Below are positions 1-42,366 of a DNA stretch of 64,000 bases, in pieces (within the stretch, counting starts at the first letter, position 1; every line of letters starts with the position of its first letter). The DNA is from Takakia lepidozioides. Lineage: Eukaryota > Plantae > Bryophyta. Position numbers and translations under genes: made by a program. Location of the stretch: the NCBI GenBank assembly GCA_030704615.1, contig CM060734.1:11036001-11100000 (forward strand), in the 5' to 3' direction. The notes under the pieces were generated by a model that was not told the DNA's origin, did no database searches, and saw only the letters and a program-made list of their open reading frames with translations.

Positions 1-1256
1 ATCCGGGGGGATGGACTTCGGTGGCAGATCTCAAACTATAACTTCTTGATGAGAAAGATGTATGGGTTCATCCACCTCCGTCGGTGGGTACGTGGGACCC
101 AGATGCTCCATTATTGGAGGCCGGACTGCTCTTCCGCTTCGCATCATTTCCAAAATCTAAGGGCTTCGTAGCTGTCCGCAAGGTCATTGTCATCTGCATC
201 CAAGTCGTCCTCAGGTCCTCCTTTGCAAGGATGCCGTGCTTCCGGAACCGGGACGACTGCCCATTTGGAGGCATCGATTATGCAATGTATTCGGCCACAT
301 CGGGAGACATTGTTATCTGGTACACAGATTACAGAGAAGATACTGGTTCGATTGTGGAAACATTGGTGGCTTTTGAGTATATCGTAGGCCACTACGCCTT
401 CGAGCGGGGTGACGATCTTGGTCTGAGGAGTCCGTGGCTCCTGCGCATCCTCGATTCCGATTTTCCCAGCTACGACGGTCACCCATGCAGAAGAAGGCGC
501 ACTGCTATGCTGTTGCGGTGGAACTGCTGCCACTGGACGTGGGTGGACTCCATCGGAGAGACCTATTCTCCTCAAGGAGTGCGCTCCTCTTCTCCATTGT
601 ATGGGGACATTCGCATTGGTGTGGACGACGAAAACGTGAAGATTTCCATATTCGATGGTGGTATGATTGAAGGGCAGGACATTGTGGTGAACATCACTAG
701 GGGCGGTACAACGGCTACAATCGACTTTACATGGAGGAGCCCCATGACTCATGAGCTAGTTCTGAGAGCAGTCGAAGTCCCATTGACAACGTGACTTGTA
801 TTCAGTAGGCACAGGGCTAAAGATTTGATGGCACAATCAGCACAGTAGACGTGCTTCAAATGCAATTCATGTGGATCAATAAAAACCTCATTGTGCCCTC
901 TTTTTATTCTATTCTGTGTCCATCGTTCCCAGAATGCGTCATTGCTCATTTCGTTTGGGATTGGGAGTGTGGGTGGATTTTGCAAGTGGCTGGTAGGCTG
1001 AAATGGGCCCCCATTGTACAGAGCAGTACCACCCTACCATTCGCGAAACATTGCCTTTCAATATATAATTCTAAATAACATTGCGAACCTCCTTCATCGG
1101 GAGGTCCTTCTCCCCCTATGACCGTGGCACCCTAAACCCTATTCCCGCGGACACTCATTTCCGGAAAATAGTGCTGCTCATGTTTTTTTCCACACTTACG
1201 ACTCTGCTCATGGCTCATGCCGCTCATGGCTCATGGCTCATGAAATAGCAGCCCCC
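1..1256 (-). mobile_element. Left end of Mutator-like element family 1 (MULE-1), inverted, inserted into another MULE-1 copy
   Basis: Near-identical reverse complement of 19383-20657. Ends in GCTCATG repeats plus CATGAAATAGCAGCCCC(C), then joins directly to internal transposase sequence that is uninterrupted at ~37670 on the - strand. Confidence 0.85.
231..794 (+). CDS. MULE-1 cargo gene A, ~187 aa, unknown function (MPCFRNRDDCPF...WNCCHWTW...VEVPLTT)
   Basis: Intact ORF. ATG 231 chosen because the paralog at 20958 starts at the same CAAGGATGCCGTGC context. Protein-level conservation with that paralog supports coding. Confidence 0.65.
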   Translation: MPCFRNRDDCPFGGIDYAMYSATSGDIVIWYTDYREDTGSIVETLVAFEYIVGHYAFERGDDLGLRSPWLLRILDSDFPSYDGHPCRRRRTAMLLRWNCCHWTWVDSIGETYSPQGVRSSSPLYGDIRIGVDDENVKISIFDGGMIEGQDIVVNITRGGTTATIDFTWRSPMTHELVLRAVEVPLTT

Positions 1257-2646
1257 AGGTTGAGGCCGACGCCCTTACCGCCGCAGGATTTGGATGGTGC
1301 AGCGCACTGACGTCCCCAGACAACCATTTCCGCTTCCACAGCCTCCACCACCGACCCCTGTGAGAGCAAGAACAATGGGACATGACAGCTCTAAGCATCC
1401 TACACACCGTTGGGGGAAACCGAAGAGGCGGCGACCTCCCTCAAAAGTGAACGAGACAAGGATGGGGAATGCACTTCGGATGAACTGTACAATCCAGAGC
1501 TCGACAGAAGTGCCCCCACCAGGATTCGGGCGTGTGTATCAGATGGCCACGGCGGGCTCAGCTGTTTGCAATGAGGTGTACACCATCACCATTTCAGAAT
1601 TACCCACCTGCAATTGCACCGACTTCCAGATCATGGCAAACAAGGGGGCATCATACTGCCCTTGCAAGCATTTGTACTACGTGTACCTAAAGAGACTCCG
1701 TTGTAATTCCACAACTCATCACTTCATACATGCACCAGGGTTGAGCCCCCAGGAGGTTCACACTCTTCTGAATATGGATCCAGGGGACCAGTGAGCTTGG
1801 CTTGCGGTCCCCATACAATGGTACACCCATCCTTTTCGGATAGTAGAACTGTACTGCTGCCAGTACCTCAGACTCTGGCCACAGAAAGGTCCGACATATG
1901 TCTTGCCTACCAGTAACCTGTTTTGCTCGAACTAAGATATTACTATATCGTTCACTTGTTTCCACGTGCATGTATTTTTGTATGTTGGAGGGTTCATGTT
2001 TTTCTGCTTTCCGAAAACTTGCTTTCCTCATTCGACCTCCGACAAGGAAATGCGGCGCCGCATTTCCAAGTATCGTCGTAGGTACTGGTAGAGGCGGCCT
2101 TCGCCAACACCAAACCGCTCCAAAATTTCGCACGTGCGAACCCTAATGCGGCACCTTATTTCCCAGTTCAGTTGCAAACGTTTCCCGCCGAATACCCGAA
2201 GAAGACAGAATTGTGAAGTACTGCAGACTGTATTGGTGCAGACTCCATTGGTTCAATCGCGGCAAAAAGGTCAACTTCATTCCAATGTTAAGGCATGTAA
2301 AACCGCGGAATACTCTATACAGGCCAGTATGCGACGTCCTTTTGCAGTGGTATACTGGATTTCCCGTTGCACGGTCACTTATTTCCATGAGCGGATCTAT
2401 AAAACCATGAGCGGACTTGTTACTGACGACATATCTTCGCCGCATTACATGATCTGGAACGTCCAAAAACGGCAAGGTCAAATAAAAAAACTATTATTTT
2501 AATACTTGTTTAATCTGCCGCATTTCCAAATTTGGAGGAGTCCGCTCATGAAATCCGCGTATCTTAGACTTCGGCTCACCGCTCATGCGGCTCATGCGGC
2601 TCATGGCTCATGGCTCATGGTTTCTGCTCATGAAATAGTAAACCTC
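1257..2646 (+). mobile_element. Right portion and right terminus of a MULE-1 copy
   Basis: Homologous to 36317-37670 (reverse). Ends in GCTCATG repeats plus CATGAAATAGTAAACCTC, followed by GCGGTTCT (target duplication shared with 19375-19382). Confidence 0.85.
1294..1794 (+). pseudogene. C-terminal SWIM zinc-finger part of the MULE-1 transposase
   Basis: CNCTDF-x10-CPCKH fits the SWIM CxC...CxH pattern; near-identical to 37134-37568. Confidence 0.8.
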
Positions 2647-5150
2647 GCGGTTCTTACCATTTGGGCTTAAAAACGCTCCCGCTGAGTTTCAAAGAGTCAT
2701 GGACAGGATTCTAGCAGGGGTGGAGTTTGCTCGGTGCTACATAGATGACATCATCATCTTTAGTGCTACGGTGGAGGAGCATGAGAGACACCTTCAGGGG
2801 GTATTTGAGCGCTTGAGGACGCACGGATTGAAGTTACATCCGGGCAAGTGCAAGTTTTTCCACAACCAAATTGAGTATCTGGGTCACATGATATATCCTG
2901 GAGGATTGGGGGTACAACAGACTAAGGTAGAGTCCATTGCACAGGTTCCACGCCCCACGGATGTGAGCCGAGTTCGAGCTTTCATGGGGTTAGCAAACTA
3001 TTACAGACGGTTTGTTAAGGGATTTAGTGCCATTGCAAAGGCTCTAACCAAGCTGACCAAGGTGGACCAGGAGTGGCAGTGGGAAGATGAGCAAGAACAA
3101 GCTTTTCAAGAGCTCAAGGCGAGGTTGACCTCGGCGCCCATCTTGAGACGACCTATCAGGGGCGTCCTTTTCAGCTACATACAGATTGGAGCATGCTGGG
3201 GCTTGGAGCGGTGCTCACACAGGTGGATGATGAGGGAAGAGAGTTCGTAGTGGCTTATGCTAGCCGCTCGAACAATGCTGCAGAGTCTAAGTATAGCTCA
3301 TATGAGGGAGAATGCTTAGCTGCAGTGTGGGCCGTGGCACACTTCAGGTGCTATCTATACGGCAATCTCTTCACCCTTGTCACAGATCACCAACCACTCA
3401 AGTGGTTGATGGAGTCAGACAAGCTTACGGGGAAGCTTGCACGGTGGGCACTCATCCTTCAAGAGTATGACTTTCAGGTGGTGCATCGACCGGGTTTGGT
3501 CAATCGCAATGCAGATGGGTTGAGTCGCAATCCATGCACGAGCCAGCAGGATGACACTGGAGCTCGGTGGCATGGTGAGACGGATGAGGAGATGGTGCCC
3601 GGATGGCATGCATCTGCATTTCTGTGTATCTTGGCAGCGGAAGGCCAGGTTGGACCTGCAACAGGGATGACTGTAGATCAAGTGTCTGAGGACCCGGAGG
3701 CCAGCAATGAGCAAGGTGGCGCCAAAGATATACATGAGGATTCAGTTGTGTTGGACTACCTCCGCACTGGAGACACGGCAGCCACTGTGACTGCCAAGGA
3801 GAGGGATCGGATCCTACAACGAGCCAAGAGGTTCAAGTGGGAGGGGACACACCTGCTCCGAGTGTGGGAGGATGGTCGAGTGAGGATTGTGCCTCACCCA
3901 ACACAGCGGGCACGGTTAGTGCGGCATGCCCACGAGGAGTTGGGGCATTTTCCTACTGCAGGGGCAGTATTGGTGGCGTGGTATGCACACAGAGGTGCAA
4001 AAATTTGTGGCTAGGTGCATGGTGTGTGACAGGGTGCGTGCTTCATTCAACGCCCCTACTCCACAATTGCACCCTCTTCCGATCATGGGATTGGGCTACA
4101 GGTGGAGTCTTGACTTCGCAGGGCCGTTGCCACTGACCATGCGCCACAACAAGTACGTGTTGGTGATGGTGGAGCACTTCTCCAAGTGGATTGAATTGGT
4201 TCCATTGCCTGATAAGGCTAGTGAGGGAGCTGCGTATGCATTCTTGGATTGTGTGCTTAGCCGATTCGGTGCTCCAGCTGAGGTACTCACGGACCAAGGG
4301 AGAGAGTTCTTGGGGGAGTTTCAGGCTTTGTGTGACAAGGCCTTGATAGACCACCGCACCACCTCTCGGGATCATCCTGAGGCCGATGGCTTGGCAGAGA
4401 GAGTTGTTCAGACAGTAAAGAGGGGTTTGCGCAAGTATGGCTTGCAGAAGGGACACCTAGGAGATTGGGACCTTCAGTTACCCTGGTTAGCCATGGGCTA
4501 CAGGTTCAGCAAGCAAGCATCACTTGCCTTCTTCTCACCATACTTTCTTCTCTTTGGCCGAGAGCCGGATTTGCCTACATCCATTCGCAGAGAAGCTGCT
4601 ACAGTTCTTAACCTTGACGATCCGGACGTGTGGGCACGTGCATGTGAGCAGCGTGCAGAGTTGTTCAAGAGAGTCATGCCCATGGCTTTCGAGAACCTTC
4701 CATTGCACAACACCGTGATACGTTGAGGTATGCTACCATACGTGGTGGGGGCTATCGTCCTGGGGTTTGGAGATTCAACCCTGGTGACTATGTCTATCTG
4801 CAGCAGACTGCTCCTACGACCCTGGATGTGACTGCAGGACGTGTTATTTTGAGGGTTCGAGAGGTCTTGCCCTCAGGCGTCTTGGTCTTGGAGGGTCGGG
4901 ATGGCATAACTTGGAAGGACCATGTGCGTAATTGTGCGCCATGTCACCTTCCGAATGTCGATGGCAGGATTGACCCAAACCTGGCAGTGGTATTGCAGGT
5001 TTGAGGTGCATGTTGTGTGGGTCTGCTAAAGGGGCAGCCACCATGCTGGTGTGTGATCGATGCTCTAGAGGTTGGCATATGGGGTGCTTGACTCCACCTC
5101 TTGAGATGGTTCCAGATGGGGATTGGTTATGTCCACAATGCATTGGATAG
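2647..5150 (+). pseudogene. pol: Gypsy family A pol, 3' half: RT (YIDD), RNase H, integrase, C-terminal PHD finger
   Basis: LPFGLKNAP, RCYIDDII, VAYASR..YSSYEGECLAAVWA, TDHQPL, HEELGH..CMVC, DFAGP, TDQG, DGLAER; frameshifts at ~3165, ~3950, ~4700 and ~4995. Confidence 0.93.
5007..5141 (+). other. PHD finger (C4HC3) at the integrase C-terminus
   Basis: Manual translation CMLCGSAKGAATMLVCDRCSRGWHMGCLTPPLEMVPDGDWLCPQC, stop at 5148-5150; not reported in the ORF track. Confidence 0.92.
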
Positions 5151-5409
5151 TGGGAGTGGATACAACCATGGGAGGCTAACAAGCAACGCAAGGCCCAGCT
5201 ACAGGAGACCTTGAATACACGAAGTCCTGGCTCAAGTTCACAGATTGCAAGACGGCGACTAACGATGGGGCTACTCTTGTACCCGGCCTCTTGGTCTATA
5301 GAGTTTGAGTACGATAGGGACAGTGATAGAGGACTTAGTACGGCTATGGCTATTACGTCTTGTAGCTATCTGGAGGTAGAGGGACCTATCCACCAGCTAG
5401 GGGGGCGAT

Positions 5410-5810
5410 TGTGGTAGACTACTTTATTGTGCATATATGTGTGGTGTGGTTTGGACAGCGATGTAGTTGTGTAGCGATATGTATGCGCACGACAGCTGTC
5501 AAGTTAAATAAGCACAGTGTGAAAACAGCTAGCATAAAACCAGTTATTTGTATTTAACACTTGGATTTAGGTCAAGTGTTAAATCAGGTGTCAAGTTTAG
5601 TTTGACACCTGGTCCGTCTTATCTTCACGAGAGCGGCAGTCGCGCAGCTCATCTCTCTCGAGTTGAGCCTGCGCGACCGAGCTCCTGTGTGCGTTTAGAT
5701 CTGAGTGTACTCATGATGGGAGTGTAGGTTGTTGTGGGGTGGAGTCCCCATAGCTTGGGGTGCCCCTGGCTCGACTACTGTTTTAAAGAGTGATGGTTTT
5801 GGATTTCACA
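5410..5810 (+). repeat. Probable 3' LTR of Gypsy family A (~400 bp)
   Basis: Follows the purine tract AGGGGGG (5399-5405); begins TGTG and ends CACA; its first 90 bp recur at 5859-5948. Confidence 0.65.
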
Positions 5811-5858
5811 TTGTTTCTTGTGTGGAGAGCAGTGTCATTTGTTAGCTTTCTTTTCTAT

Positions 5859-5948
5859 TGTGGTAGACTACTTTATTGTGCATATATGTGTGGTGTGGTT
5901 TGGACAGCGATGTAGTTGTGTAGCGATATGTATGCGCACGACAGCTGT
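5859..5948 (+). repeat. Truncated second copy of the family A LTR start
   Basis: Identical to 5410-5499; joins family C RT at ACAGCTGT. Confidence 0.8.
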
Positions 5949-7508
5949 TTTGCTTATATCTCGGTCGTCCATCTTAATCTGCCAAAAACCAGATTGTAAA
6001 TCCAGAGCAGAGAACCACTTGGCTTTCCCCAACTAGTTCAAAACATCCTGACTTAATGGCATAGGGTAAGAGTCCCTCCTAGTCAAGCGGTTCACCGGCC
6101 TGAAATCACCACAAAAACGCTTGGATCCATCCTTTTTTGGTGGAAGGGTAACTGGACATGACCACTCTGAACTACTTTCCCGCATCTTACCTTGTGAGAT
6201 TAAAGTCTCAATTTGTCTTTGTACCTCGTTTTCCTCCCACTCTGATAGGCGGCTGGGACGACTTCTGCAAGGGGGAAAACCTTGTGTATCAATTGTATGT
6301 TCCACCTCACTGCAATAACCCAAGTCAGCTTTGCTAAGAGCAAAACATTCCTGATTTTCTCTCAGCTCTTGCTCCAGTTCTATCCTATGTTCTGGGGCTA
6401 GCTCTGGATTGATGTGAAGTCTGGATTTCAGACTTCTCCAACGACTCTCCATTTCTTCTTCATGGCTGGGTTCCCAACTCTTTTCGTCTTCTATTTCCAC
6501 GTTGTTGTTCCCTAGTTCACCATTCCAAGCTTTCTGGTAAGCTTCCTGTATGATAGAGGCAGCCATGCTACGATGGGTCTCTTCCTGAAGGAGTTCAGAC
6601 ATCCCTTGGTCTTCAAACAAATCCTCCCCTAGGTTGACATTATCTATTATCTCCTCAACATTCTTCAAGGCTCTATCTACCTTTTCGCTCTCCTCAGATC
6701 CTCCCATCTCTTCATCTTTATCAGATTCAGAGCTGTCAGAGTCTGGAGATCCTTCCTCCGTGTCCACAAACTCTTCCTCGGGCTTTCTTTCTTCTTCCCA
6801 CAAACCTAGGTACTGTTCATCTGATGTCAGGGTCAAGACATTTCCTGCTGACGTAGTGCTTGCATACCTTACTCTGCCCTCATCCCCTCTGTGGTAGGCT
6901 GTTCTGGTGACTGCAGGCTCATTATAATTTATGGTGTGCAAAGGGAAGTGAGCAAAATCCTTTCCTGGCCCATAGCGTACACGAATCGTTTCAGCTTCGG
7001 TGTCAACTACCGCGCCAAACTTTTTGAGAAAGTCCAAGCCCAGAAGCATGTGATACGTATCCGTGTTTACCACCATAAAGGACAAGCGATTGGTTAGCTC
7101 TCCTACTTTGACCTTGATGTCCTCAAGTCTGCCCATTGCAGTCTCAAGAGCACCTGAGGCTACTCTGTAATTTACATCCTTATCAGTAACAACAGATCCC
7201 ATCAGACCAAGATCCCTGACTGTACTCGCGGATATCACAGAAAGCATGGCACCGGTGTCAATTTGGCCTAATACTTGGTAATCTCGCATTGTAATCACTA
7301 CATGAAGCACTTTAACCTTACCAGTATAAGCATACGAGATCGTGGGCTCAGCGTGTGCTGAGTACAAAGGCCTTGGAACATCCCTCACAATTTCTACACT
7401 GTGAGTTGTCTCCTTTTGTTGTACCATTGCCCTTTCCACCACTTTGACCAGCCCCTTTAATTTGTCTAACTCTCCGGGCACAGTCATGATTAGGTCCATG
7501 GGAGACAA
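5941..7508 (-). pseudogene. pol: Gypsy family C protease and RT N-terminus (truncated)
   Basis: QIDTGAMLS (aspartic protease), LLGLDFL, KKDGSKRFCGDFRPVN; after an in-frame stop, LGKAKWFSALDLQSGFWQI...SKTA. Confidence 0.88.
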
Positions 7509-7561
7509 GGATATTCTCCCCTTGTAGAAGTGGTTCGGGATTCAGGATTTAGTACCTCCTT

Positions 7562-8689
7562 CTATGCAGCTTTGAAATTGTTCTTTGGGTAGATCTCACT
7601 CTTGGTCTTGCTTGGCTGTTCACTGCTCTCACCATTCCTCTCTGGTGACTCTGTAGGCTCAACAATAGGACTCTGGACAGGGATGCGCATCCTTGGAAGT
7701 CTGACTTCATTGATACTGTTTTGTGACATCAGATTTGTCATTTCTGCGAGTACATCATCCTCATCATCATAGAACACATCTACAAAGTTAGTTCCAGGAG
7801 TTCCCATCATAGTCTGGTTGAGTTTTCTACTGCACTCACTCTCTGTATGCCCTAGTACCTTGCAAAAGTTGCATCTCACACCACACATTTCCGTGGAATG
7901 CCCAAACCGGTGACATTTGTCACACTTAGCTTGGGTTCTTCCTTCAGGACAATATGTAGCTATGTGACCTTCTTTATGACAAACGTTACAAAGGCGAACA
8001 TGAGGAGGTGTTCTAGATCCCGAGCTTTCTCCTATGACTGGTCCCCTATCAAAGTACTTTTGTAGGGTAGTGTTTAGCTGATCAAGTCTTCTGTCCACAG
8101 GGTTGACAAACACAACTGACTCATTTGTATCATCTCCTTCCAATGGCTCTAGAGGTATTTTCCCCAACTTTCCCAGGCCCCTCTCAATCTCAATGGCTGT
8201 CTCAAGTCCTTCCTCTAAATCAGAGAAGCGCCTGCCCAGCATTACTCTTGCTATTTCAGGTCTCAAACCTGCTGCAAATCTACGCCTCTGTTCCAAATCA
8301 GACGCCCCACTTCTTATAAACAACCGGTTCAACCTATCAAAGTATGTCTGAACCCTTTGTCTATTTTCCTGTTTGATGGTATCCATCCTCAGCCTGATTT
8401 CTGCCAAGTCAATGACACCAAACTTGGCTGATATGGCTGCCCTGAAATCTTCCCAGTTGTCTGGTCTAGGGTTTTGTTTACGGTACCATTCATCAGCCTT
8501 GGCTCTCAGGTTGAGCCTTGCTACCTTGAAGGTTTTATCCTCATTTAAATCTCTGACATCTGCCTCCATCTGAATCCTTTCCAGCCAGTCATTCACATCT
8601 TCACTATTCCTACCATGATAAGGCACATCTATGCTAGTTGGACTGGTCATTCTTCTACTCTCTAGTCTGAGTTCAAACTGGTTTAACAC
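7562..8689 (-). CDS. gag: Gypsy family C Gag with three CCHC zinc knuckles
   Basis: Retrotransposon gag-like core (DWLERI, AKADEWY, F..GLRPEI) plus CNVCHKEGHIATYC, CDKCHRFGHSTEMC and CNFCKVLGHTESEC. Confidence 0.88.
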   Translation of the reverse strand: MLNQFELRLESRRMTSPTSIDVPYHGRNSEDVNDWLERIQMEADVRDLNEDKTFKVARLNLRAKADEWYRKQNPRPDNWEDFRAAISAKFGVIDLAEIRLRMDTIKQENRQRVQTYFDRLNRLFIRSGASDLEQRRRFAAGLRPEIARVMLGRRFSDLEEGLETAIEIERGLGKLGKIPLEPLEGDDTNESVVFVNPVDRRLDQLNTTLQKYFDRGPVIGESSGSRTPPHVRLCNVCHKEGHIATYCPEGRTQAKCDKCHRFGHSTEMCGVRCNFCKVLGHTESECSRKLNQTMMGTPGTNFVDVFYDDEDDVLAEMTNLMSQNSINEVRLPRMRIPVQSPIVEPTESPERNGESSEQPSKTKSEIYPKNNFKAA

Positions 8690-14400: not shown

Positions 14401-17400
14401 AAGTTGTTTAAGAGGTATCTGCTGTGGTGTAGTGTCGGCAACACCAATTGAAGAGGAAACCAGCAGTTACCCACCACATTTCTATGAAGAAAGGAGGAGA
14501 GAAGTGAAATCCTAGAAGAAACCAGCCGCTGTGAGCTTAAAGGATGAAGTGGTGACTGGTTGGACAATCACAGCTGATGAGCAGGTGAGAGAAGTAATGT
14601 GGGAACTCAGAGAGGAACCGAGAATGGTGAAGTAGGAGCTGATTTGGAGCCGGAATTCTTCGAAGAAGCTAAAAGCTTGTTCATCCAATACAGATGTATT
14701 TGCTTGGAGCTATGAGGATCTAAAAGGGATACCACCTGAAGTCTGTCAGCATAAGATTGAACTGGAACCAGGGGTCGTACCAATCAAGCAGGCGAGGTAT
14801 AGAATGAATCCAACTACGCACAAAAGGTTGGAGAAGAGATAAAGAGTTGGCTGAGGCTAAAGTTTATATACCCAATAGAGTATACAACTTGTTGTCACCC
14901 ATTGTTATAGTTCCAAGAAGAATGGCAAGCTAAGAGTATGTGTAACTATAAGAGGCTGAATGCTTGTACGAAGAAGAAGATCCTTTCCCTTTGCCATTCA
15001 CAGATAGCAGTATTAGACACTGTGGCAGGCCATGAGATATGTACTCATCATGGATGCTTCAGTGGTTATAATCAAGTGCAAGTGCAGAAGAAGACCAAGG
15101 GAAAACAGCTTTCATCACAGAAGGGGGGCTTATGCCATACAAAGTCATGCCCTTTGGACTTTTGTAATGCACCAGCGACCTTTCAGAGAGTGATAAGTGA
15201 ATCTTTTCATGAGTATCTGGATGATTTCATGCATGTGTTTTTGGATGATTTCAGTGTGTACAGCTCTAAGAATGAGCACTTGCATAAATTGAGGAGTTAT
15301 GCCTGGCCAGATGCAGGATGAGAGGTCTGGGCTTGAATCCAGAGAAGTAGTGTACTTTCTGTGTGTGAACTCAGGGGTGCTTCTGGGACACATTGTGTGT
15401 AAGAAGGGACTTCTTGTGGATCCCAGGAAGACAGAGTCCATTAAAGTCTCTCCACCACCAGTGAATGTTAAGAGTTTAAGGAGATTCCTTGGGCAAACCA
15501 GTTATTACAGAAGATTTCTCAAAGGTAGTGCACAAATAGCAGCACCATGAGCAAGCTTCTGAAGAAAGATGCAGTGTTTGCCTGGACAGCTGAATGTCAA
15601 CAGGCGTTTGAGGAACTTACACTATCATTTGTCACGACTAACAACAGGAGAGGGGCGCACAGGAGTGGAAGATCAGTTACCTGATGCGAGTTTATTGTAA
15701 TGGAGGTGCAAGGAAGTGCAGATGAATGGTTAGATTGGCAGTGGCCACTCAGATACTACTTGCTCATGGTCAGTGCCCACCTAGTTATGGTAAAGAGCAG
15801 AGGAAGAGAATTGCTATCAAAGCTTTACCTTATACTATGATAGGAAGCAGAATATATAAGTTAGGACCTGATGGTAGTACTAAAACGATGCTTGTACCAC
15901 CATGAAGTAAATAAAGTCTTGGAAGAAGTTCATAAAGGAGTGGGCTGGAGGTCATTTTGGAGAAGAGAGACTACCAGTAGAAAGATACTACTCGCAGGAT
16001 ACTGGTGGCCTACTTTGTTCAAAGATGTACATGAGTATTGTCAGAAGTGTGATGAATGTCAGAGGCTAGGACCTTTGCAGAGATCTGGAAGAATGGCCTT
16101 GCATCCTACAATGCCTACGGAACCATTTCAGAAATGGGGACTAGACTTTGTTGGACCAATAATCCACATCCACCAACCGAATACACGAAACACGGTACAT
16201 AATTACAGCCACTGATTATACTACAAAGTGGGTGAAGCTAAAGCTTTGAGGACAACACAGCCAAGTCCACAGCACAGGTTCCGTACGAGAACATACTACA
16301 CGATTTGGATGTCCCTTAGAATTTATCAGTGATCAAGGAAGTCACTTCATGAATGAGACCATTGAGTTGTTGACTAAAGAGTTTATGATTGTGCATAGAA
16401 AGAGTACAACATATTACCCACAGGGTAATGGGCAGGCAGAGGCTACCAACAAAATACTATGTACTATTTTGGCTAAGATAGTCAATGCAAACAGAACGGA
16501 TTGGGATACAAAGCTGCTGACAGCTTATGGTCATACAGGACTTCATATAAAGTCACCACTAAGTATATACACCATTCCAATTAGTTTATGGTATGGAAGC
16601 CTTACTTCCAGTGGAATTCCTGTTACCTACCATGAGAACGGTAGTGGGGAGAAAAGAATGGAATTGCAAGACTCCATCAGTCAGGGTCAGGAAACATGAA
16701 TTATACCATGTGGAAGAAGTATGTGTGATGCAGCTGATAATATGACAAGAATTCAGATGAAGCGAAAGGAACAGTTTGATGAAGGAAAATTAAAGACTTT
16801 TAAGACGGGGGATTTGGTTCTATGGTTGCAGAAGAAAGGAAAGATTCAAGCTTCTAAGCTCAAATCACCGTGGAAAGGACCTTATGTCATACAAAAGATG
16901 TATGATAATAACACCATGTTACAAACCATTAACAAAGAAATGCCTGGGAAGAGTGAATGCAAATAAGTTGAAGGGGTACAGTGGTATCCATGACAAACCC
17001 CTGCAGCATTGATTTGCATAAGAAACCGCAAGAACAGTCACGGGACTGCACCAGTGTTACGAACGGAGTATGGAACACTAGTTGCTAGGCCCAGCATATA
17101 CGACCAGGGTGGGCAAAACAAACGTTGACACCCCTATCACACCCGCCAAGGCGCAACACAGCCTATCACAGCCCATCACGACGTGACACAGCCAACTACA
17201 GCCCGTCACGGCGTGACACAGGCAAACACAGCCCATCACGACGTGACACAGCCAACCACAGCCCGTCACGACGTGACACAGCCAACCACAGCCCAGCAAG
17301 GCGCAACACAGCCTATAACAACATACCACAGCGTGTCACAGCCTATCACAGCTTACCCAGTGCATCACAGCCTATCACAGGGTAACACAGTATGACACAG

Positions 17401-17470
17401 CCTGTCACAGCTCAACACAACCTACTAAAGTTACACCATCCATAGAATCAGTGGCAAGTGGACACATAAT
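11495..17470 (+). mobile_element. Gypsy family B internal region, degenerate (gag, protease, RT, integrase; RNase H deleted at ~15625)
   Basis: CAKCQNEGHTTTEC knuckle, [39 protein letters not shown]; many frameshifts. Confidence 0.9.
17130..17420 (+). repeat. ~30-bp CACAGCC-rich tandem repeat in the family B 3' region
   Basis: Units like CACAGCCCATCACGACGTGACACAGCCAAC; reverse copy at 27750-28080. Confidence 0.85.
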
Positions 17471-17926
17471 AACTTCAGGAAAATGGATGACGAGAGAGAG
17501 GAAACGGAAATTACTTTAAAAATAGACACGTGGAGGTCAGGGTGCGACACACAGCAGAGAATGAAGTGCAAGGACAGGTGTCAAAAAGAAAGAGGACAAA
17601 AACGGCCGTCAAATGGGATGAAAGGCGGGCCCATTAATGAATACGGAAAAAGGGAAACGGAACGACGGGCAAGTACAGAAAAGCCGAATTCATGTCGCAT
17701 GTGTGATCCTAGTGGACTATCCAACAGGGAAAGTCCACTAAAGAAGAAAAAGTTAAAATCCAGTCACAGCAGATACAGCCAATAGAAACCAGAGAGAAAT
17801 GATCAAGAAAATGGAGGGAAAATGAGCGCAAGAGGCGCGCGTCGTTCTGAGTAACGGGCGTCTCGACAGGACAGGCCATAAATGCTATAACTTGGAAACT
17901 ATGGAGGAACTAACAGCCAGTCACAG

Positions 17927-18570
17927 CTCGAGGACGGGTCTGTTTTGGGAGATGGTGCGGATTTTGCGCTACTTGCAACTTCATCAAGCTATATCTCCAA
18001 CATACATCTTGGAGAATGTGCCACTGATGGGTGATTCTCGGGCCAGGGTGATGGCCAGTGTGCATCAAGTCCGGTCGTGGCTTGGGTCAGCAGTGTTGCT
18101 GGATGCAGCTGCAGTGGGGTCACGGGGTCATCGTCCACGACTATGGTGGACTAACTTGATGCCACCTGCACTGCTCAAGCGTGCATTTGATGGGGTGCAG
18201 CGGCCAGCACACCTCACCGTGGATGGCATTTTGGACACAGGGAGGCAGTCTCAACGTGAGACACGATGACCGTTCGCCTTTGGCAGTGGTCAACAGGGTG
18301 GGTCAACCACGAGCAGCATTACCTACACTGCTCAGCTTCCCAGGATCCCATGCTTTTCGGGATGGTGGACCTGGCCTCCTGTGGGATGCTCAGTTGCAAC
18401 AGTTAGTGGAGCCTAATGCCGACGAGCGAGAGCGGGCTATGGGGTTTTCCACTGGGACCACGGCGGTGCCTTCTCTTTCTGAGGCATCACGGCGTCAGGT
18501 GTTGGGGCAAGCAATGGATCTCAATTGCTTGACCTAGATTATCAGCTTGGCTATGGCTGAGCAACGAAGG
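17927..18570 (+). pseudogene. DNMT3-like C5-cytosine DNA methyltransferase domain (C-terminal half) of Gypsy family A
   Basis: RTGLFWEMVRIL, YILENV (motif VI), LDAAAVGSRGHRPRLWWTNL (motif VIII), DERERAMGFSTGTT (IX), RRQVLGQAMDL (X); the same order as DNMT3 catalytic domains. Motifs I-IV lost to 5' truncation. Confidence 0.87.
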
Positions 18571-18759
18571 ACCACGGGGTGTAGACATCCATGGCACACG
18601 TGGGAGGTGCTCGAGGTTCAGAGGGAGTTGACAGCCAAGGCAGCTGTGATGATGAGGTTGGGGATTCTTCTCGGGATGAGAGGTTCTCAATGATGAGATG
18701 ATGGGGCAGGATGAGGCCTTGTCATTGACTGAGCAGGAAGGGAGTACTGCTCAAAAGGT

Positions 18760-19382
18760 TGCAGCATAGCAACCACGGGACGCGTCCTCTACCTCTAAGC
18801 CCACTGGACTTAAGGTTGCAGTTACGGAGGACAATTGGGAGCGTGACATTGGACCCATTGTCACCGGAGGAGAGAGCACGTATACGGCGGTTCCTGAGGG
18901 TTTACAGGAATTGCTTTGCCTTCAGTTTGAAGGACTTGGGAGCACTGAAGGGTCAAGAGATCCGTATTGAGTTGGCCACTGACACGCCAATATTTCGGAG
19001 ACCCTATAGATACAGTGACATGGAGAGGTCTTTGATTCAGATGAGGACTCAAGATCTCTGGGGGAGGCAGGTTGGTGGAGCTCTATGGTGGAGAGTATGC
19101 TTCAGCCACAGTGATGCCAGCCAAGAAGGATGTCTATGGCAATTGGACGGAGAGACGTATGTGCGGTGATTACCGGCCTGTAAATCGTCAGACCAAGTCC
19201 GATAGGTATGCCATGCCGACACCAGAGGAGATCTTTGATGCCATTGGGCATTCCAAGGTCTTTAGCACGGGATTTACGATCCGGATATCACCAGTTGCCG
19301 ATCAAGGAGGCGGATAAGCAAAAGACGGCATTCTGGGGGATCAATGAGCACGGGAAGGATTGCCTATACCAGTGGCGGTTCT
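18760..19382 (+). pseudogene. pol: Gypsy family A RT N-terminus, interrupted by MULE-1
   Basis: PIFRRPYR, RMCGDYRPVN, YAMPTPEEIF, KTAFWG...LYQWRF; continues as LPFGLKNAP from 2647. Confidence 0.9.
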
Positions 19383-19842
19383 AGGGGCTGCTATTTCATG
19401 AGCCATGAGCCATGAGCGGCATGAGCCATGAGCAGAGTCGTAAGTGTGGAAAAAAACATGAGCAGCACTATTTTCCAGAAATGAGTGTCCGCGGGAATAG
19501 GGTTTAGGGTGCCACGGTCATAGGGGGGAGAAGGACCCTCCCGATGAAGGAGGTTCGGCAATGTTTTTTAGAATTATATTGAAAGGCAATGTTTGCGAAT
19601 GGTAGGGTGGTACTGCTCTGTACAATGGGGGCCCATTTCAGCCTACCAGCCACTTGCAAAATCCACCCACACTCCCAATCCCAAACGAAATGAGCAATGA
19701 CGCATTCTGGGAACGATGGACACAGAATAGAATAAAAGAGGGCACAATGAGGTTTTATTGATCCACATGAATTGCATTTGAAGCACGTCTACTGTGCTGA
19801 TTGTGCAATCAAATCTTTAGCCCTGTGCCTACTGAATACAAG

Positions 19843-20402
19843 TCACGTTGTCAATGGACTTCGACTGCTCTCAGAACTAGCTCATGAGTCATGGGTTCCT
19901 CCATGTAAAGTCGATTGCAGCCGTTGTACTGCCCCTAGTGATGTTCACCACAATGTCCTGCCCTTCAATCATACCACCATCGAATATGGAAATCTTCACG
20001 TTTTCGTCGTCCACACCAATGCGAATGTCCCCATACAATGGAGAAGAGGAGCGCACTCTTGAGGAGAATAGGTCTCTTCGATAGAGTCCACCCACGTCCA
20101 GTGGCAGCAGTTCCACCGCAACAGCATAGCAGTGCGCCTTCTTCTGCATGGGTGACCGTCGTAGCTGGGAAAATCGGAATCGAGGATGCGCAGGAGCCAC
20201 GGACTCCTCAGACCAAGATCGTCACCCCGCTCGAAGGCGTAGTGGCCTACGAATACTCAAAAGCCACCAATGTTTCCACAATCGAACCAGTATCTTTTGT
20301 GTAATCTGTGTACCAGATAACAATGTCTCCCGATGTGGCCGAATACATTGCATAATCGATGCCTCCAAATGGGCAGTCGTCCCGGTTCCGGAAGCACGAC
20401 AT
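19843..20402 (-). pseudogene. MULE-1 cargo gene A, frameshifted copy
   Basis: Near-identical to 231-794. Confidence 0.75.
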
Positions 20403-20957
20403 CCTTGCAAAGGAGGACCTGAGGACGACTTGGATGCAGATGACAATGACCTTGCGGACAGCTACAAAGCCCTTAGATTTTGGAAATGATGTGAAGCGGA
20501 AGAGCAGTCCGGCCTCCAATAATGGAGCATCTGGGTCCCACGTACCACCGACGGAGGTGGAACGTGTTCATCACGCCAGCGGTGGATGAACCCATACATC
20601 TTTCTCATCAACAAGTTATAGTTTGAGATCTGCCACCGAAGTCCATCCCCCCGGATGGAAATTCGGCGCCGCGTTTACATCGAAGAGGGGATGGACTTCG
20701 TCGTGTCCAGTGGCTATCGGCCCACCTGGCAGTGAGTGCCCATAGTTTGCATGGCAGGGTAGGAAACTGAAACAGCTACATTCATGAAGCAGCCAATCTT
20801 CATCGGTTCAGGATCCTGTAGGGGGGAAATTTAAATGTGCCCTGGAGTGTTTGTGAGGAATTGCAGCGTTAGCTTGAACTTTTTCCAGCCACCGCGCTGC
20901 TCCTCCTCCATCCGGGAGCTGCTGTCATTGAGCGTACTCCGCTACTCTTTTTCAAGG

Positions 20958-33884: not shown

Positions 33885-34918
33885 TGTCGAGCGGCTTTTA
33901 CTCACCCATCCCTTCGCTCTCCGAGGTGGGAACTCCAAGATAGAAGAGTTGGAAATCTCTAAGCACTTAGCCCGCTCAGAACAATCAGTCATGACCTACA
34001 GCTAGTGTACATGGGGGTGTTTCCATTTGTACTCCTTCCCCATTCATGTTAGCGAGTTACCTTACTGTCTGCAATGAAGTATCAGATTGCTTCAGAAATC
34101 TATCAGGTTCCATCCATTCATTCCACAACTTCACTCAGGTCCTTTACACAGTGTGAGTATGAAGTATGTATCAGATTAATATCTATCAAGTATCAGCTGA
34201 AGCCATGGTGTCTCTAATCTACTCTACATACAATTCTACAGCTTGTATTCATCAAGTAACAACAGATCGTCATTTCTCATACTCCGTGCTCTTTATCTTC
34301 CCCCCCTCAGAGATGTGCTCTTCCCTCTATTTCCAAGCCCTGATGCCAGAAGTTCCCCCCACCAAGAAGTGATCCCCCCCAGATGTCCCCGCTTCTCGCT
34401 TTATCTATTTAAAGCCGTTCTAACCGCTTTCCTAACTAACCGTTATCTCTATTAGTACACATTCCTTTTTCAAGATGGTCGTTCCCCACAGTCGTTCCCT
34501 GCCAATGGTAACTGTTCCCCAGCTGTGCCCGAACTGTGACTGGCTGTATCAGGCTGTGGCGGGCTGTGACTGGCTGTGTAGCACTGTGCGAAGCTGTGGC
34601 GGCTGTGTCGGGCTGTGACTGGCTGTGACGGGTTGTGTTGGCTGTGCAAAGCTGTGGCGGGCTGTGTCGGGCTGTGACTGGCTGAGACGGGCTGTGTTGG
34701 CTGTGCGAAGCTGTGGCGGCTATGTCGGGCTGTGACTGGCTTTGACGGGTTGTGTTGGCTGTGCGAAGTTGTGATGGCTGTGTCGGACTGTGTATCTTCC
34801 CCCCTAAAGCCTGTTGTTGTCACCCCTAAGGCTCCTGTTGGTCTCAGTCTGTGTAAAAATTAAGGGTACCCCCCACAGATCCCGTAAAAGCGTCTAAGTC
34901 CCAAGCAACCCTCTAACA
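33885..34918 (-). repeat. 5' LTR of Gypsy family B
   Basis: TGTTAGAGGG...GCTCGACA on the - strand, followed by TTTGGCAACCATACTGGGGA; homologous to 41292-42366. Confidence 0.9.
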
Positions 34919-36316: not shown

Positions 36317-37133
36317 GAGGTTTACTATTTCATGACCAGAAACCATGAGCCATGAGCCATGAGCCGCATGAGCGTTGAGCCGAAGTCTAAGACACGCGGA
36401 TTTCATGAGCGGACTCTTTCAAAGTTTGGAATGCGGCAGATTAAACAAGTATTAAAATAATAAGTTTTTTAATTTGACCTTGCCGTTTTTGAAGTTCCAG
36501 ATCTTGTAATGCGGCGAAGATATGTCGTCAGTACAACTCCGCTCATGTTTTTTAGATCCCTCATGGAATGAGTGACCGTGTAACGAGAAATCCAGTAAAA
36601 CCACGGCAAAGGACGTCGCATACTGGCCTGTATAGAGTATTCCGCGGTTTTACATGCCTTAACATTGGAATGAAGCTGACCCTTTTGCCGTGACTGAACC
36701 AATAGAGTCTGCACAATTCTGTCATCTTCCAGTATTCGGCGGGAAAGTTTTGCAAGTGAACTAGGAAATGCGGTGCCGCATTAGGGTTCGCACGTGCGAA
36801 ATTTCTGGGGTTTGGTATTGGTGAATGCCGCATCTACCAGTACCTACGACGTTACTTGGAAATGCGGTGCCGCATTTCCTTGTCGGGGGTCGAATGAGGA
36901 AAGCAAAGTTTGGGAGAGCAGAAAAACAGGAACCCTCCAACACACAAAAAATACATGCACGTGGAAACACGAGTGAATGACATAGTATTATCTTAGTTCG
37001 AGCAAAACAGGTTACTGGGAGGCAAGACATAAGTCGGACCTTTCTGTGGCCAGAGTCACAGCTACTTACAGCAGTACAGTTCTACTATCCGAAAAGGATG
37101 GGCGTACCATTGTGTTGGGACCGCAAGCCAAGG

Positions 37134-41291: not shown

Positions 41292-42366
41292 TGTTAGAGG
41301 GCTGCTTAGGACTTAGACGCTTTTACGGGATTTGTGGGGTACCCTTAATTTTTACACGGACTGAGACCAACAGGAGCCTTAGGGGTGACAGCAACAGGCT
41401 TTAGGGGGGGAGATACACAGCCCAACACAGCCAGTCACAGCCAACACAGCCCGTCACAGCCCGTCACAGTCCAACACAGCCAGTCGCAGCCAACACAGCC
41501 CGTCACAGTCCAACACAGCCAGTCACAGCCAGTCACAGCCAACACAGCCTGTCACAGCTTCGCACAGCCAACACAACCCGACACAGCCGCCACAGCTTCG
41601 CATAGCCCTACACAGCCCGACACAGCCAATCACAGCCGCCACAGCCTGATACAGCCAGTCACAGCTCGGCACAGCAGGGGAACAGTTACCATTGGCAGGG
41701 AACGACTGTGGGGGAACGACATCTGAAAACTGAACGTGTACTACAGAGATAATGGTTAGTGAGGGAAACGGTTAGAACAACGGGTAGGAAGATAAAGCCA
41801 GGAGCGGGGACGGGAAAGGGGATCACTTCTGGGGAATCACTTCTTGGGGATCGCTTATTGGGGGGGGGGGGACTACTTCTTGGAGGATTTCTGGCATCAC
41901 AGCTGGGAAATGAAGCGGAGAGCGCATCTCTGAGTAGAAAGAGGGAGAGCACGGAGTAGGAGGAGAACGATCTGTTGATGCTTGATGAATGCAAGCAGTA
42001 GAGTTGTAATGTAGAGCAGATTAGAGACTCCATGGCTTCAGCCTGATACTTGATAGATATTAATCTGATACATACTTCATACTCACATTGTGTCCAGAGA
42101 TCTGAGTGAAGCTGTGGAATGAATGGATGAGTTGATCGAATCCGATAGAATGCTGAAGCAATCTGATACTTAAATACCAACAGTAAGGTAACTAGCTAAC
42201 ATGAATACGGGAAGGAATACAAATAGGAAACACCCCCATGATACACTAGCTGTAGGTCATGACTGATTGTTCTGAGCGGGCTGAGTGCTTAGAGATTTCC
42301 AACTCTTCTATCTTGGAGTTCCCACCTCGGATAGCGAAGGGATGGGTGAGTAAAAGCCGCTCGACA
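41292..42366 (+). repeat. 5' LTR of Gypsy family B with internal CACAGCC repeats
   Basis: TG...CA ends, followed by PBS-like TTTGGCAACCATACTGGGGA (resembles the Athila tRNA-Asp-type PBS). Confidence 0.9.

What the first reader, a model, noticed from the sequence alone, without database searches (positions are those of the whole stretch)
17927..19382. Gypsy retrotransposon encoding a DNMT3-like cytosine methyltransferase just upstream of RT
Seen: C5-MTase motifs VI, VIII, IX and X lie ~200-300 bp before the RT start on the same strand, and the shared target duplication ties this half to the pol at 2647-5150. Known: retrotransposon-borne DNMTs have been reported in dinoflagellates and charophyte algae. 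Inference: such an element exists in what appears to be a land plant and might methylate its own cDNA or insertion site. The catalytic PC motif is missing here because of truncation.
Basis: partly seen in the sequence, partly recalled or inferred. Interest (0 to 1): 0.85.

Follow-up and report, generated by a model that had tools for sequence, protein, structure and literature searches.

The report
Dead Gypsy retrotransposon copy carrying DNMT3-like methyltransferase
This stretch is a broken, 5'-truncated copy of a very abundant plant (bryophyte-type) Gypsy retrotransposon family whose polyprotein carries its own DNMT3-like cytosine DNA methyltransferase between protease and reverse transcriptase, a kind of element so far described only in an alga.

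Summary
Window 17927-18537 encodes, in two frames, the C-terminal two thirds of a C5 cytosine methyltransferase (motifs VI, VIII, IX and X). It is followed on the same strand by the N-terminal half of a Ty3/Gypsy RT (18858-19382). Pfam and PDB found nothing with the short pieces alone, but a library-wide phmmer search gave 351 hits, the best at 7e-40. These include single-ORF polyproteins with the order PR-DNMT-RT-RH-INT(-PHD).

A 94-95% identical, uninterrupted sister copy (L003) and loose ends in other runs show three things:
- This copy is cut off at 17927, just after the catalytic PC motif.
- The RT was split by a TIR transposon with an exact 8-bp target duplication (GCGGTTCT).
- The 3' half lies at 2647-5150, in permuted order.

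The family's domain is DNMT3-type. A profile search of PDB gives DNMT3A at 2e-26 against DRM at 4e-15, and all top 50 Foldseek matches are DNMT3A/B/C. Its dN/dS of 0.28 matches the rest of pol.

Named relatives are liverworts, Sphagnum, Closterium and chlorophytes. I found only Klebsormidium (KnitGypsy-Dnmt3) in the literature. This copy is dead, and the family's function (methylating its own DNA) remains inferred. The scan's first readers also noted about 8.1-kb elements of this kind (one described as DNMT between protease and RT) elsewhere in this genome.

The parts
17927..18254 (+). DNMT3-like methyltransferase, first frame: from just after motif IV through motif VI (ENV, 18012-18020) and motif VIII (HRPRLWWTNL, 18129-18158). 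The copy is truncated at 17927.
   Evidence: phmmer best E 6.7e-40. tblastn to P0034/P0160 residues 1078-1186. DNA identity 94% to L003 661-1305, starting exactly at 17927. Loose ends before 17927 in X1, X5 and X9. Motif coordinates.
18256..18537 (+). DNMT3-like methyltransferase, second frame: target-recognition region, motif IX (ERERAMGF, 18424-18447) and motif X region (LGQAMD, 18502-18519). It ends in an in-frame TAG at 18535-18537.
   Evidence: tblastn gives 71% identity to the Calypogeia protein P0003 and 48% to P0034 residues 1188-1287. Other copies carry 2 more letters at 18255.
18538..18857 (+). Linker between the methyltransferase and RT. This copy lacks about 77 bp at 18568 that other copies have.
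   Evidence: L003 1305-1382 has no counterpart in the window. There are 64 loose ends before 18568 in X1.
18858..19382 (+). N-terminal half of the Ty3/Gypsy reverse transcriptase, with two frameshifts (about 19060-19095 and about 19270).
   Evidence: tblastn to P0252 residues 1348-1515 and P0034 residues 1405-1493. Three overlapping ORF frames. Other copies carry 2 more letters at 19269.
19375..19382 (+). Left copy of the 8-bp target-site duplication GCGGTTCT made by the TIR transposon that split the RT.
   Evidence: Sequence read. Both copies map to L003 2198-2205.
19383..20656 (+). Left end of the inserted TIR DNA transposon, with CATGAGCC subterminal repeats. It is not part of the retrotransposon.
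   Evidence: Sequence read. It is 96% identical to the reverse complement of window 1-1258. Other copies of the retrotransposon run straight on past 19382.
1256..2646 (+). Right end of the TIR transposon, abutting the 3' half of the RT.
   Evidence: Sequence read. It is 91% identical to the reverse complement of 36317-37673.
2647..3154 (+). Right copy of the TSD (2647-2654) and the C-terminal half of the RT, including YIDD.
   Evidence: Pfam RVT_1 positions 149-205, E 3e-14. DNA identity 95.3% to L003 2198-4988. Translation.
3163..3606 (+). RNase H domain.
   Evidence: Pfam RT_RNaseH, E 3.6e-32. tblastn.
3727..4983 (+). Integrase (H2C2 zinc finger, catalytic core, C-terminal region), with frame changes near 3950 and 4700.
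   Evidence: Pfam rve E 1.6e-14 and Integrase_H2C2 E 6.4e-7. tblastn.
5007..5150 (+). PHD finger at the integrase C-terminus, followed by the end of the pol ORF (stop at 5148-5150).
   Evidence: Pfam PHD, E 6.2e-13. Translation. The same domain is in L003 and P0252.
5400..5948 (+). Purine-rich tract (5400-5408), then a putative 3' LTR starting with TGTGG at 5410. Its first 92 bp recur 100% identical at 5857-5948. The extent of the LTR was not determined.
   Evidence: Sequence read. Self-BLAST. L003 homology runs to 5416, where that contig ends.

Best explanation
Window 17927-19382, together with 2647-5150 (plus an LTR start at 5410), is one dead copy of a very high-copy Ty3/Gypsy LTR retrotransposon family. 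The family's polyprotein has the order (gag-)PR-DNMT-RT-RNaseH-INT-PHD.

The DNMT module is a non-permuted, DNMT3-type C5 cytosine methyltransferase.

Shown, for this copy:
- It has lost gag, PR and MTase motifs I-IV through truncation at 17927.
- It carries several frameshifts, an in-frame stop and a deletion of about 77 bp.
- Its RT was split by a TIR DNA transposon with an 8-bp target duplication, and the two halves now lie in permuted order.
- It therefore cannot make any enzyme.

Shown, for the family:
- The catalytic motifs are kept in intact ORFs.
- The domain has evolved under the same purifying selection as RT and INT.
- So it is a working part of the element and not a passenger.

Inferred, not shown here:
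- In active copies the methyltransferase is made as part of Gag-Pol.
- It travels with RT and integrase and methylates cytosines de novo on the element's own cDNA or new insertion.
- The PHD finger on the integrase reads histone H3 tails to steer integration.

The confidence given applies to the identity and anatomy. The inferred mechanism alone would rate about 0.4.
For: Homology. The frame-A piece gives 351 hits at E<=1e-3, best 6.7e-40. Hits such as P0034/P0160 (CCHC-PR-DNA_methylase-RT-RH-INT) and P0252 (PR-DNMT-RT-RH-INT-PHD, one ORF of 2358 aa) pass Pfam PF00145 above its cut-off. The window pieces are collinear with them.

Same element family. L003 is 94-95% identical in DNA and is uninterrupted: DNMT-RT-RH-INT-PHD in 5 kb. 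It holds motifs I and IV upstream of the truncation point. Loose ends at 17927 and 19382 in runs from different studies show that other copies continue there. In run X1, 29,466 contigs were laid on the stretch, so the family is highly repeated.

DNMT3 type. A profile of 30 domains searched against PDB gives DNMT3A 1.9e-26, DNMT3C 1.4e-24, DNMT3B 2.5e-24, DRM 3.8e-15 to 3e-12, HhaI 2.5e-11 and DNMT2 about 1e-7. The AlphaFold model of the Calypogeia domain has pLDDT 91.6, and the top 50 Foldseek PDB matches are all DNMT3A/B/C, with E down to 4e-19 and TM 0.80-0.85. The alignment keeps the invariant Cys of motif IV, the Glu of ENV, RxR of motif VIII and ERE of motif IX.

Selection. Window against L003 gives DNMT dN/dS 0.28 (17 synonymous and 15 non-synonymous changes, p=7e-4) and the rest of pol 0.31 (p=2e-7).

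Precedent. KnitGypsy-Dnmt3 lies in the pol ORF of a Klebsormidium Gypsy element with Ka/Ks<0.2, and retrotransposon DNMTs methylate CG de novo (PMC5890265).
Against: - The window's own fragments do not reach Pfam or PDB significance alone.
- No enzyme activity, methylome or clear RNA evidence for this family was available. The one possible RNA contig (run X7) is only guessed to be RNA.
- Motif X is GQ/GR rather than the bacterial GN. Many relatives have GWECQ instead of GWPCQ, so activity cannot be taken for granted in all of them.
- dN/dS rests on only 32 changes and is not corrected for the strong C>T/G>A bias.
- The self-methylation role is borrowed from other lineages.
- The permuted order of the two halves is not explained.
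Confidence: 0.85

Rival explanations
1. Chance adjacency. A fragment of a host DNMT3 gene happens to lie next to an unrelated Gypsy RT fragment in a transposon-rich region.
For: The region is a mosaic of nested and truncated elements. The window's pieces alone do not hit Pfam.
Against: The same DNMT-RT junction is seen in L003 (94-95% identical), L001, the Calypogeia locus L002 and continuous ORFs of more than 2000 aa. All ten mid-length hits checked carry retroelement domains or the DNMT domain only, and none carries a host-type domain such as PWWP or ADD. The DNMT and RT trees show the same A/B split.
Confidence: 0.01
2. The family's DNMT module is a catalytically inactive pseudo-enzyme, kept for DNA or chromatin binding or for polyprotein architecture, not for methylation.
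For: Motif X differs from the GN consensus, and many relatives replace the motif IV proline with Glu or Ser. No activity data exist for this family. The Klebsormidium paper also notes poorly conserved motif X.
Against: The catalytic Cys, ENV, RxR and ERE positions are invariant or nearly so across 30 diverse domains. The liverwort clade keeps GWPCQ. Animal DNMT3A/B also lack GN in motif X and are active (aligned). Purifying selection equals that on RT and INT. Retrotransposon DNMTs of another lineage were active (PMC5890265).
Confidence: 0.12
3. The enzyme is active but acts mainly in trans on host chromatin or on competing elements, for example to shape the methylation state around insertion sites or to mimic gene-body CG methylation. 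It does not act on the element's own cDNA.
For: A PHD histone reader sits on the integrase, which suggests chromatin-directed action. The family is at very high copy number, so any expressed enzyme could affect the host methylome.
Against: Nothing here separates cis from trans action. Old copies show the C>T/G>A decay expected of methylated, silenced DNA, so the elements are not protected from methylation-linked mutation.
Confidence: 0.25

Closest known systems
KnitGypsy-Dnmt3 of Klebsormidium nitens (de Mendoza et al. 2018, PMC5890265)
   Same: A non-rearranged DNMT3-type domain inside the pol ORF of a Ty3/Gypsy LTR element. Copies are under purifying selection. Motif X is poorly conserved. 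The host is a streptophyte.
   Different: The host here is a land-plant-type genome, whose nearest named relatives are liverworts and Sphagnum, and the family is at very high copy number. That paper ascribed the acquisition to the K. nitens lineage and its survey held no liverwort or Sphagnum. I could not compare sequences or domain order directly because no K. nitens sequence was on hand. A PHD finger on the integrase is not mentioned in that paper's text.
SymbioDIRS-Dnmt3 and SymbioLINE-DNMT of Symbiodinium (PMC5890265)
   Same: A retrotransposon polyprotein carrying a C5-MTase. Two alternative domain orders coexist in the DIRS elements, as they do here for types A and B.
   Different: The backbones are DIRS (tyrosine recombinase) and LINE, not Gypsy with a DDE integrase, and the host is a dinoflagellate.
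Animal DNMT3A/3B/3C and plant DNMT3 or DRM host enzymes
   Same: Best sequence-profile and structural match. The signature AHRxRxxWxNL is shared, and motifs I-X are in DNMT3 order.
   Different: There are no PWWP or ADD domains and the domain is embedded in a polyprotein. It is not circularly permuted like DRM: its N-terminal motifs align to the C-terminal part of DRM. Identity to DNMT3A is about 20%.
Chromoviruses (Ty3/Gypsy with a chromodomain at the integrase C-terminus)
   Same: A chromatin-reader module is fused to the integrase C-terminus.
EpiLTRs and DAM-LTRs (bioRxiv 10.64898/2026.05.21.726589)
   Same: LTR retrotransposons that assemble epigenetic writer and reader modules.
   Different: Those carry a prokaryote-like adenine MTase and a DNMT4-related DNMT with a chromodomain. 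Here the modules are a DNMT3-type MTase and a PHD finger, with no DAM.

Membership tests
C5 cytosine DNA methyltransferase (Pfam PF00145) | Significant match to the family HMM | tested here: inconclusive
   The window's own two pieces give no Pfam hit at E<=0.1. Close relatives pass the cut-off of 22 bits: the Calypogeia ORF with 40.6 bits, P0160 with 48.2 and P0252 with 32.5. The window piece matches those relatives at up to 6.7e-40.
C5 cytosine DNA methyltransferase (Pfam PF00145) | Catalytic motif IV (PC, nucleophilic Cys) and motif I (SAM binding, FxGxG) | tested here: not met
   Both are absent from this copy because it is truncated at 17927. They are present in the family: LLDLFGGIS and GWPC in L003, and GWPCQGHS in the Calypogeia ORF. 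The Cys is invariant in 30 domains.
C5 cytosine DNA methyltransferase (Pfam PF00145) | Motifs VI (ENV), VIII (RxR), IX and X in order | tested here: met
   They lie at 18012-18020, 18129-18158, 18424-18447 and 18502-18519 and align to the same motifs in relatives and in DNMT3A.
DNMT3 subfamily | Closer to DNMT3 than to DRM, DNMT1, DNMT2 or bacterial enzymes, with motif order not permuted | tested here: met
   Tested on the family profile and on a relative's model, not on the window fragment. DNMT3A scores 1.9e-26 against DRM 3.8e-15, HhaI 2.5e-11 and DNMT2 about 1e-7, and DNMT1 is not listed. The Foldseek top 50 are all DNMT3A/B/C. No tree with host DNMT3 sequences could be built.
Ty3/Gypsy LTR retrotransposon | pol order PR-RT-RNaseH-INT with a DDE integrase after RT | tested here: met
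   RT, RNaseH and INT are in order at 18858-19382 plus 2647-4983. PR and gag are missing from this copy but present in P0252, P0160 and the Calypogeia ORF.
Ty3/Gypsy LTR retrotransposon | Two LTRs flanked by a target-site duplication, with PBS and PPT | tested here: inconclusive
   There is only a purine tract at 5400-5408 and a TG start at 5410. The 5' LTR is absent through truncation, and an odd 92-bp exact repeat lies at 5857-5948.
KnitGypsy-Dnmt3 lineage | Sequence relatedness of the DNMT and RT to the Klebsormidium elements | not testable with these tools
   No K. nitens sequence appeared among the named hits, and none could be fetched.

The most novel reading that the evidence does not exclude
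Gypsy elements carrying a DNMT3-type methyltransferase are not a Klebsormidium oddity. They form an old, green-lineage-wide clade that reaches very high copy number in land plants (bryophytes). The clade has two deep branches that differ in where the DNMT module sits. Type A is PR-DNMT-RT, with named members in Closterium, liverworts and Sphagnum. Type B is RT-RH-DNMT-INT-PHD, with named members in Scenedesmus and Monoraphidium. DNMT and RT have co-diverged. Bryophyte genomes would then hold retrotransposon-encoded de novo methyltransferases able to influence host methylomes and to inflate counts of 'DNMT3 genes'.
Probability: 0.6. Interest if true: 0.65.

Novelty: new member of a known kind. 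Interest (0 to 1): 0.55.

Why it matters
Transposons are normally the targets of DNA methylation. An element that carries its own de novo methyltransferase together with a histone reader inverts that picture. The one published Gypsy case I found is in a charophyte alga with few copies.

Showing the same kind of element at very high copy number in a bryophyte-type genome, with relatives in Marchantia, Calypogeia, Sphagnum, Closterium and chlorophytes, has two consequences. First, the question 'what does a transposon gain from methylating DNA?' becomes testable in tractable land-plant models. Second, automatically annotated 'DNA (cytosine-5)-methyltransferase' genes in bryophyte genomes may be transposon parts.

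The window copy itself is only a fossil. Its value is as a pointer to the family.

Tried and rejected
- Pfam and PDB phmmer on the window's single ORF pieces gave nothing. I did not take this as refutation, because the pieces are short and diverged, and the library-wide search and the relatives settle the homology.
- I considered whether the minus-strand gag (7562-8689) and protease (6033-7508) are the missing 5' part of this element, inverted. I rejected this. That ORF runs on into its own RT at 6404-5943, which is only 34% identical to the family's RT, it has no DNMT, and no other DNMT-family piece lies in the window.
- I considered whether GHKC at 17874-17885 is a decayed PC motif. I rejected this. 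DNA homology to L003 starts at 17927, and other copies diverge from the window exactly there.
- A test for a single origin of architectures A and B, using an RT-RH tree with two outgroup Gypsy sequences, was uninformative. The two outgroups group together, so A+B is trivially one side of a branch.
- Naming the organism failed. Runs and names are coded, and the window's own proteins are masked. The nearest named proteins are only 62-71% identical.
- A tree with host DNMT3, DRM and Klebsormidium sequences was not possible, because no such sequences were retrievable. All the hits checked were transposon-borne.
- I found no simple model for the permuted order of the two halves (see Noticed in passing).
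Full report
WHAT IS IN THE SEQUENCE

On the + strand, an ORF in frame A (17892-18269) reads through SRTGLFWEM, ILENVPL and HRPRLWWTNL. An overlapping ORF in frame B (18181-18537) reads through PRAALPTL, ERERAMGF and LGQAMD, and ends in TAG. These correspond to C5-methyltransferase motifs VI, VIII, IX and X, in that order.

Downstream, three overlapping frames (18759-19384) carry the N-terminal half of a Gypsy-type RT.

Pfam and a PDB phmmer search with the single pieces found nothing. A phmmer search of the 125-aa frame-A piece against 1.84 billion representative proteins gave 351 hits at E<=1e-3 and 67 at E<=1e-10, the best at 6.7e-40.

WHAT THE HITS ARE

Long hits are retrotransposon polyproteins that pass Pfam DNA_methylase (PF00145) above its cut-off:
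- P0034 and P0160 have zf-CCHC, protease, DNA_methylase, RVT_1, RNase H and integrase, in that order.
- P0252 is a single 2358-aa ORF with protease, DNA_methylase, RT, RNase H, integrase and a C-terminal PHD finger.
- P0020, P0057 and P0062 have RT, RNase H, DNA_methylase, integrase and PHD.

Ten mid-length hits that might have been host enzymes carried retroelement domains or the DNMT domain only. One had a Copia-type gag.

The window pieces are collinear with the PR-DNMT-RT type:
- DNMT residues 1078-1287 of P0034 map to 17925-18543.
- RT residues 1405-1493 map to 19096-19375.
- RT residues 1496-1662 map to 2654-3154.
- RNase H follows at 3163-3606, integrase at 3727-4699, and a PHD finger at 5007-5141 (Pfam E 6e-13).

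SISTER COPIES PROVE THE ARCHITECTURE AND THE DAMAGE

The closest protein hit (P0195, 82% identity) lies on a 5-kb contig from another public run, fetched as L003. L003 is 94-95% identical in DNA to the window element and is uninterrupted:
- Window 17927-18569 matches L003 661-1305.
- Window 18568-19382 matches L003 1382-2205.
- Window 2647-5416 matches L003 2198-4988.

The 8 bases L003 2198-2205 are matched by both window ends. The window indeed has GCGGTTCT at 19375-19382 and again at 2647-2654, and the frame continues exactly (YQWRF|LPFGLKNAP).

Between the two ends lies a TIR DNA transposon. Its termini are AGGGGCTGCTATTTCATGAGCC... on one side and ...GCTCATGAAATAGTAAACCTC on the other.

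Upstream of the position matching 17927, L003 carries the rest of the MTase in the same frame. It has motif I (LLDLFGGIS) and motif IV (GWPC followed by a stop codon), and seven in-frame stops in all.

Laying contigs of four runs on 16900-20900 gave these results:
- 29,466 contigs of run X1 were laid on it, so the family is highly repeated.
- Loose ends before 17927 share one consensus in X1, X5 and X9, so other copies continue upstream.
- Loose ends behind 19382 equal window 2655 onward in X5, X7 and X9, so other copies are not interrupted.
- Other copies have 2 more letters at 18255 and at 19269, and further sequence at 18568.

The window copy is therefore truncated just after motif IV. It is frameshifted in both the MTase and the RT, carries an internal deletion and an in-frame stop, and is split by a transposon. 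It is a fossil.

RELATIVES IN NAMED ORGANISMS

A locus in the liverwort Calypogeia fissa (L002, GCA_965154635.1) has a 780-aa ORF with protease and a complete MTase. Its motifs are DLFGGIS, GWPCQGHS, ENVP, HRPRLWW, ERAMGF and LGQVMD. RT, RNase H and integrase follow it.

L001, a contig from an ENA assembly, shows DNMT-RT-RH-INT.

Other named relatives of the DNMT or the backbone are Marchantia polymorpha, Sphagnum troendelagicum and S. tenellum, Closterium NIES-53/54, Scenedesmus and Monoraphidium.

The window's organism is coded. One run that holds the stretch is labelled plant metagenome. The nearest named proteins (62-71% identity) are from liverworts and Sphagnum.

WHAT KIND OF METHYLTRANSFERASE

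A single Calypogeia domain finds DNMT3A best in PDB (4.7e-9).

A profile of 30 diverse domains (alignment A1) gives these scores against PDB:
- DNMT3A 1.9e-26, DNMT3C 1.4e-24, DNMT3B 2.5e-24
- DRM 3.8e-15 to 3e-12
- HhaI 2.5e-11
- DNMT2 about 1e-7

The match to DRM pairs the N-terminal motifs of the profile with the C-terminal part of DRM. The element's domain therefore has the ordinary order and not the rearranged one.

The AlphaFold model of the Calypogeia domain is confident (pLDDT 91.6). Its top 50 Foldseek matches in PDB are all DNMT3A, 3B or 3C (E down to 4e-19, target-normalised TM 0.80-0.85).

In A1, the motif IV Cys, the Glu of ENV, an Arg and Trp of motif VIII, and ExE-G of motif IX are invariant. 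Motif IV reads GWPCQ in the bryophyte clade and GWECQ in many others. Motif X is LGxAMD, closer to DNMT3's LGRSWS than to the bacterial GN.

IS THE MODULE SELECTED?

Between the window copy and L003, the DNMT part shows 17 synonymous and 15 non-synonymous changes (dN/dS 0.28, binomial p 7e-4). The rest of pol shows 42 and 47 (dN/dS 0.31, p 2e-7). Most of the divergence between the two lineages therefore accumulated while the MTase was constrained as strongly as RT and integrase.

Of the 131 differences, 69 are C>T or G>A going from the window to L003. This is the decay expected of methylated, silenced copies.

TWO ARCHITECTURES

Among the proteins gathered, about 34 have the DNMT between PR and RT (type A) and about 86 have it between RNase H and integrase (type B).

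A tree of 130 DNMT domains splits cleanly into these two groups (SH-aLRT 99). The Calypogeia relative of the window element sits in type A with other liverwort sequences.

An RT-RNase H tree of 74 rows shows the same split (type B support 99). The window's RT is nearest to P0252. DNMT and backbone thus co-diverged. Whether A and B go back to one DNMT-bearing ancestor could not be decided with the two outgroups available.

COMPARISON WITH WHAT IS KNOWN

De Mendoza et al. 2018 described KnitGypsy-Dnmt3 in Klebsormidium nitens. It is a non-rearranged Dnmt3 domain in the pol ORF of a Gypsy element, with Ka/Ks<0.2 and poorly conserved motif X. They ascribed it to an acquisition in the K. nitens lineage. 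They also showed that retrotransposon DNMTs can methylate CG de novo (PMC5890265).

Their survey held Physcomitrella and Selaginella but no liverwort or Sphagnum.

Later papers refer only to 'streptophytes (Gypsy-DNMT3)' (10.64898/2026.05.21.726589; PMC12344493).

Searches for land-plant, liverwort or Marchantia cases found none. So this is a known kind of element in a host group where I found no description of it.

First readers of this scan noted apparently full-length elements of the same kind (about 8.1 kb) at two other places in this genome. I did not check them.

HOW IT MOST LIKELY WORKS

Shown:
- the domain order;
- the DNMT3 type;
- conserved catalytic residues in intact relatives;
- purifying selection;
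- a PHD finger on the integrase.

Inferred: in active copies the MTase is translated within Gag-Pol, is present where cDNA is made and integrated, and methylates the element's own DNA or its insertion neighbourhood, while the PHD finger reads histone tails to guide integration.

No activity, methylome or reliable RNA evidence was available. A 2.2-kb contig in run X7 spans the MTase end and an uninterrupted RT, but that run is only guessed to be RNA.

VERDICT

This copy is dead. The family is a new host-range member of a known kind, of moderate interest.

Noticed in passing
window 1-2646, 2647-5948 and 17927-20656: The two halves of the split retrotransposon lie in permuted order. The 3' half (2647 onward) lies 14.7 kb upstream of the 5' half (17927-19382), and both are on the + strand. 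Window 1-1258 is a 96% identical inverted copy of the transposon's left end (19381-20656), and its terminus abuts an internal point of the right-end piece 1256-2646. A simple insertion cannot give this arrangement. Aberrant transposition or a large duplication is likely, but I could not resolve it.
   Followed up: partly
L004:1-18357 (ENA ERZ25067493, contig ctg159469_5x_c): An intact element (P0252, one 2358-aa ORF with PR-DNMT-RT-RH-INT-PHD) is present as a 100% identical head-to-tail concatemer with a period of 8261-8262 bp. This could be a tandem array or an assembled circular (one-LTR circle-like) molecule, which would hint at a currently active element in that sample.
   Followed up: partly
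proteins P0020, P0057, P0062, P0028 and about 80 others: A second architecture places the DNMT3-like domain between RNase H and integrase (RT-RH-DNMT-INT-PHD). Named members are the chlorophytes Scenedesmus and Monoraphidium. It forms a separate clade in both the DNMT and the RT trees.
   Followed up: yes
protein P0103: A 579-aa protein joins a Copia-type gag (Retrotran_gag_2) to a DNA_methylase domain of this same clade, so the module also occurs with a Copia gag.
   Followed up: no
alignment A1, motif IV column: Many elements read GWECQ (or GWSCE) instead of GWPCQ. The proline next to the catalytic cysteine, usually conserved in C5-MTases, is replaced, while the cysteine itself is invariant.
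   Followed up: no
window 5408-5499 and 5857-5948: A 92-bp stretch at the start of the putative 3' LTR recurs 100% identical 449 bp downstream, directly against the truncated minus-strand Gypsy RT at 5943. It could be an LTR-LTR junction, a tandem duplication or an internal LTR repeat. I did not decide which.
   Followed up: partly
window 5943-8689 (- strand): A different Gypsy element (gag 7562-8689, protease within 6033-7508, RT N-terminus 6404-5943) has no DNMT between protease and RT and is truncated within RT.
   Followed up: partly
window 17125-17400: A short tandem array gives a repetitive reading (SPSRRDTAN units) on the + strand. It lies inside another repeat family that has diverged copies at 34531-34793 and 41415-41675.
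   Followed up: no
Marchantia polymorpha and Sphagnum proteins P0213, P0222, P0190, P0172, P0181: Database entries auto-named 'DNA (cytosine-5-)-methyltransferase' or 'CCHC-type domain-containing protein' are 50-68% identical to the Calypogeia retrotransposon DNMT. They may therefore be transposon parts and not host DNMT3 genes.
   Followed up: no
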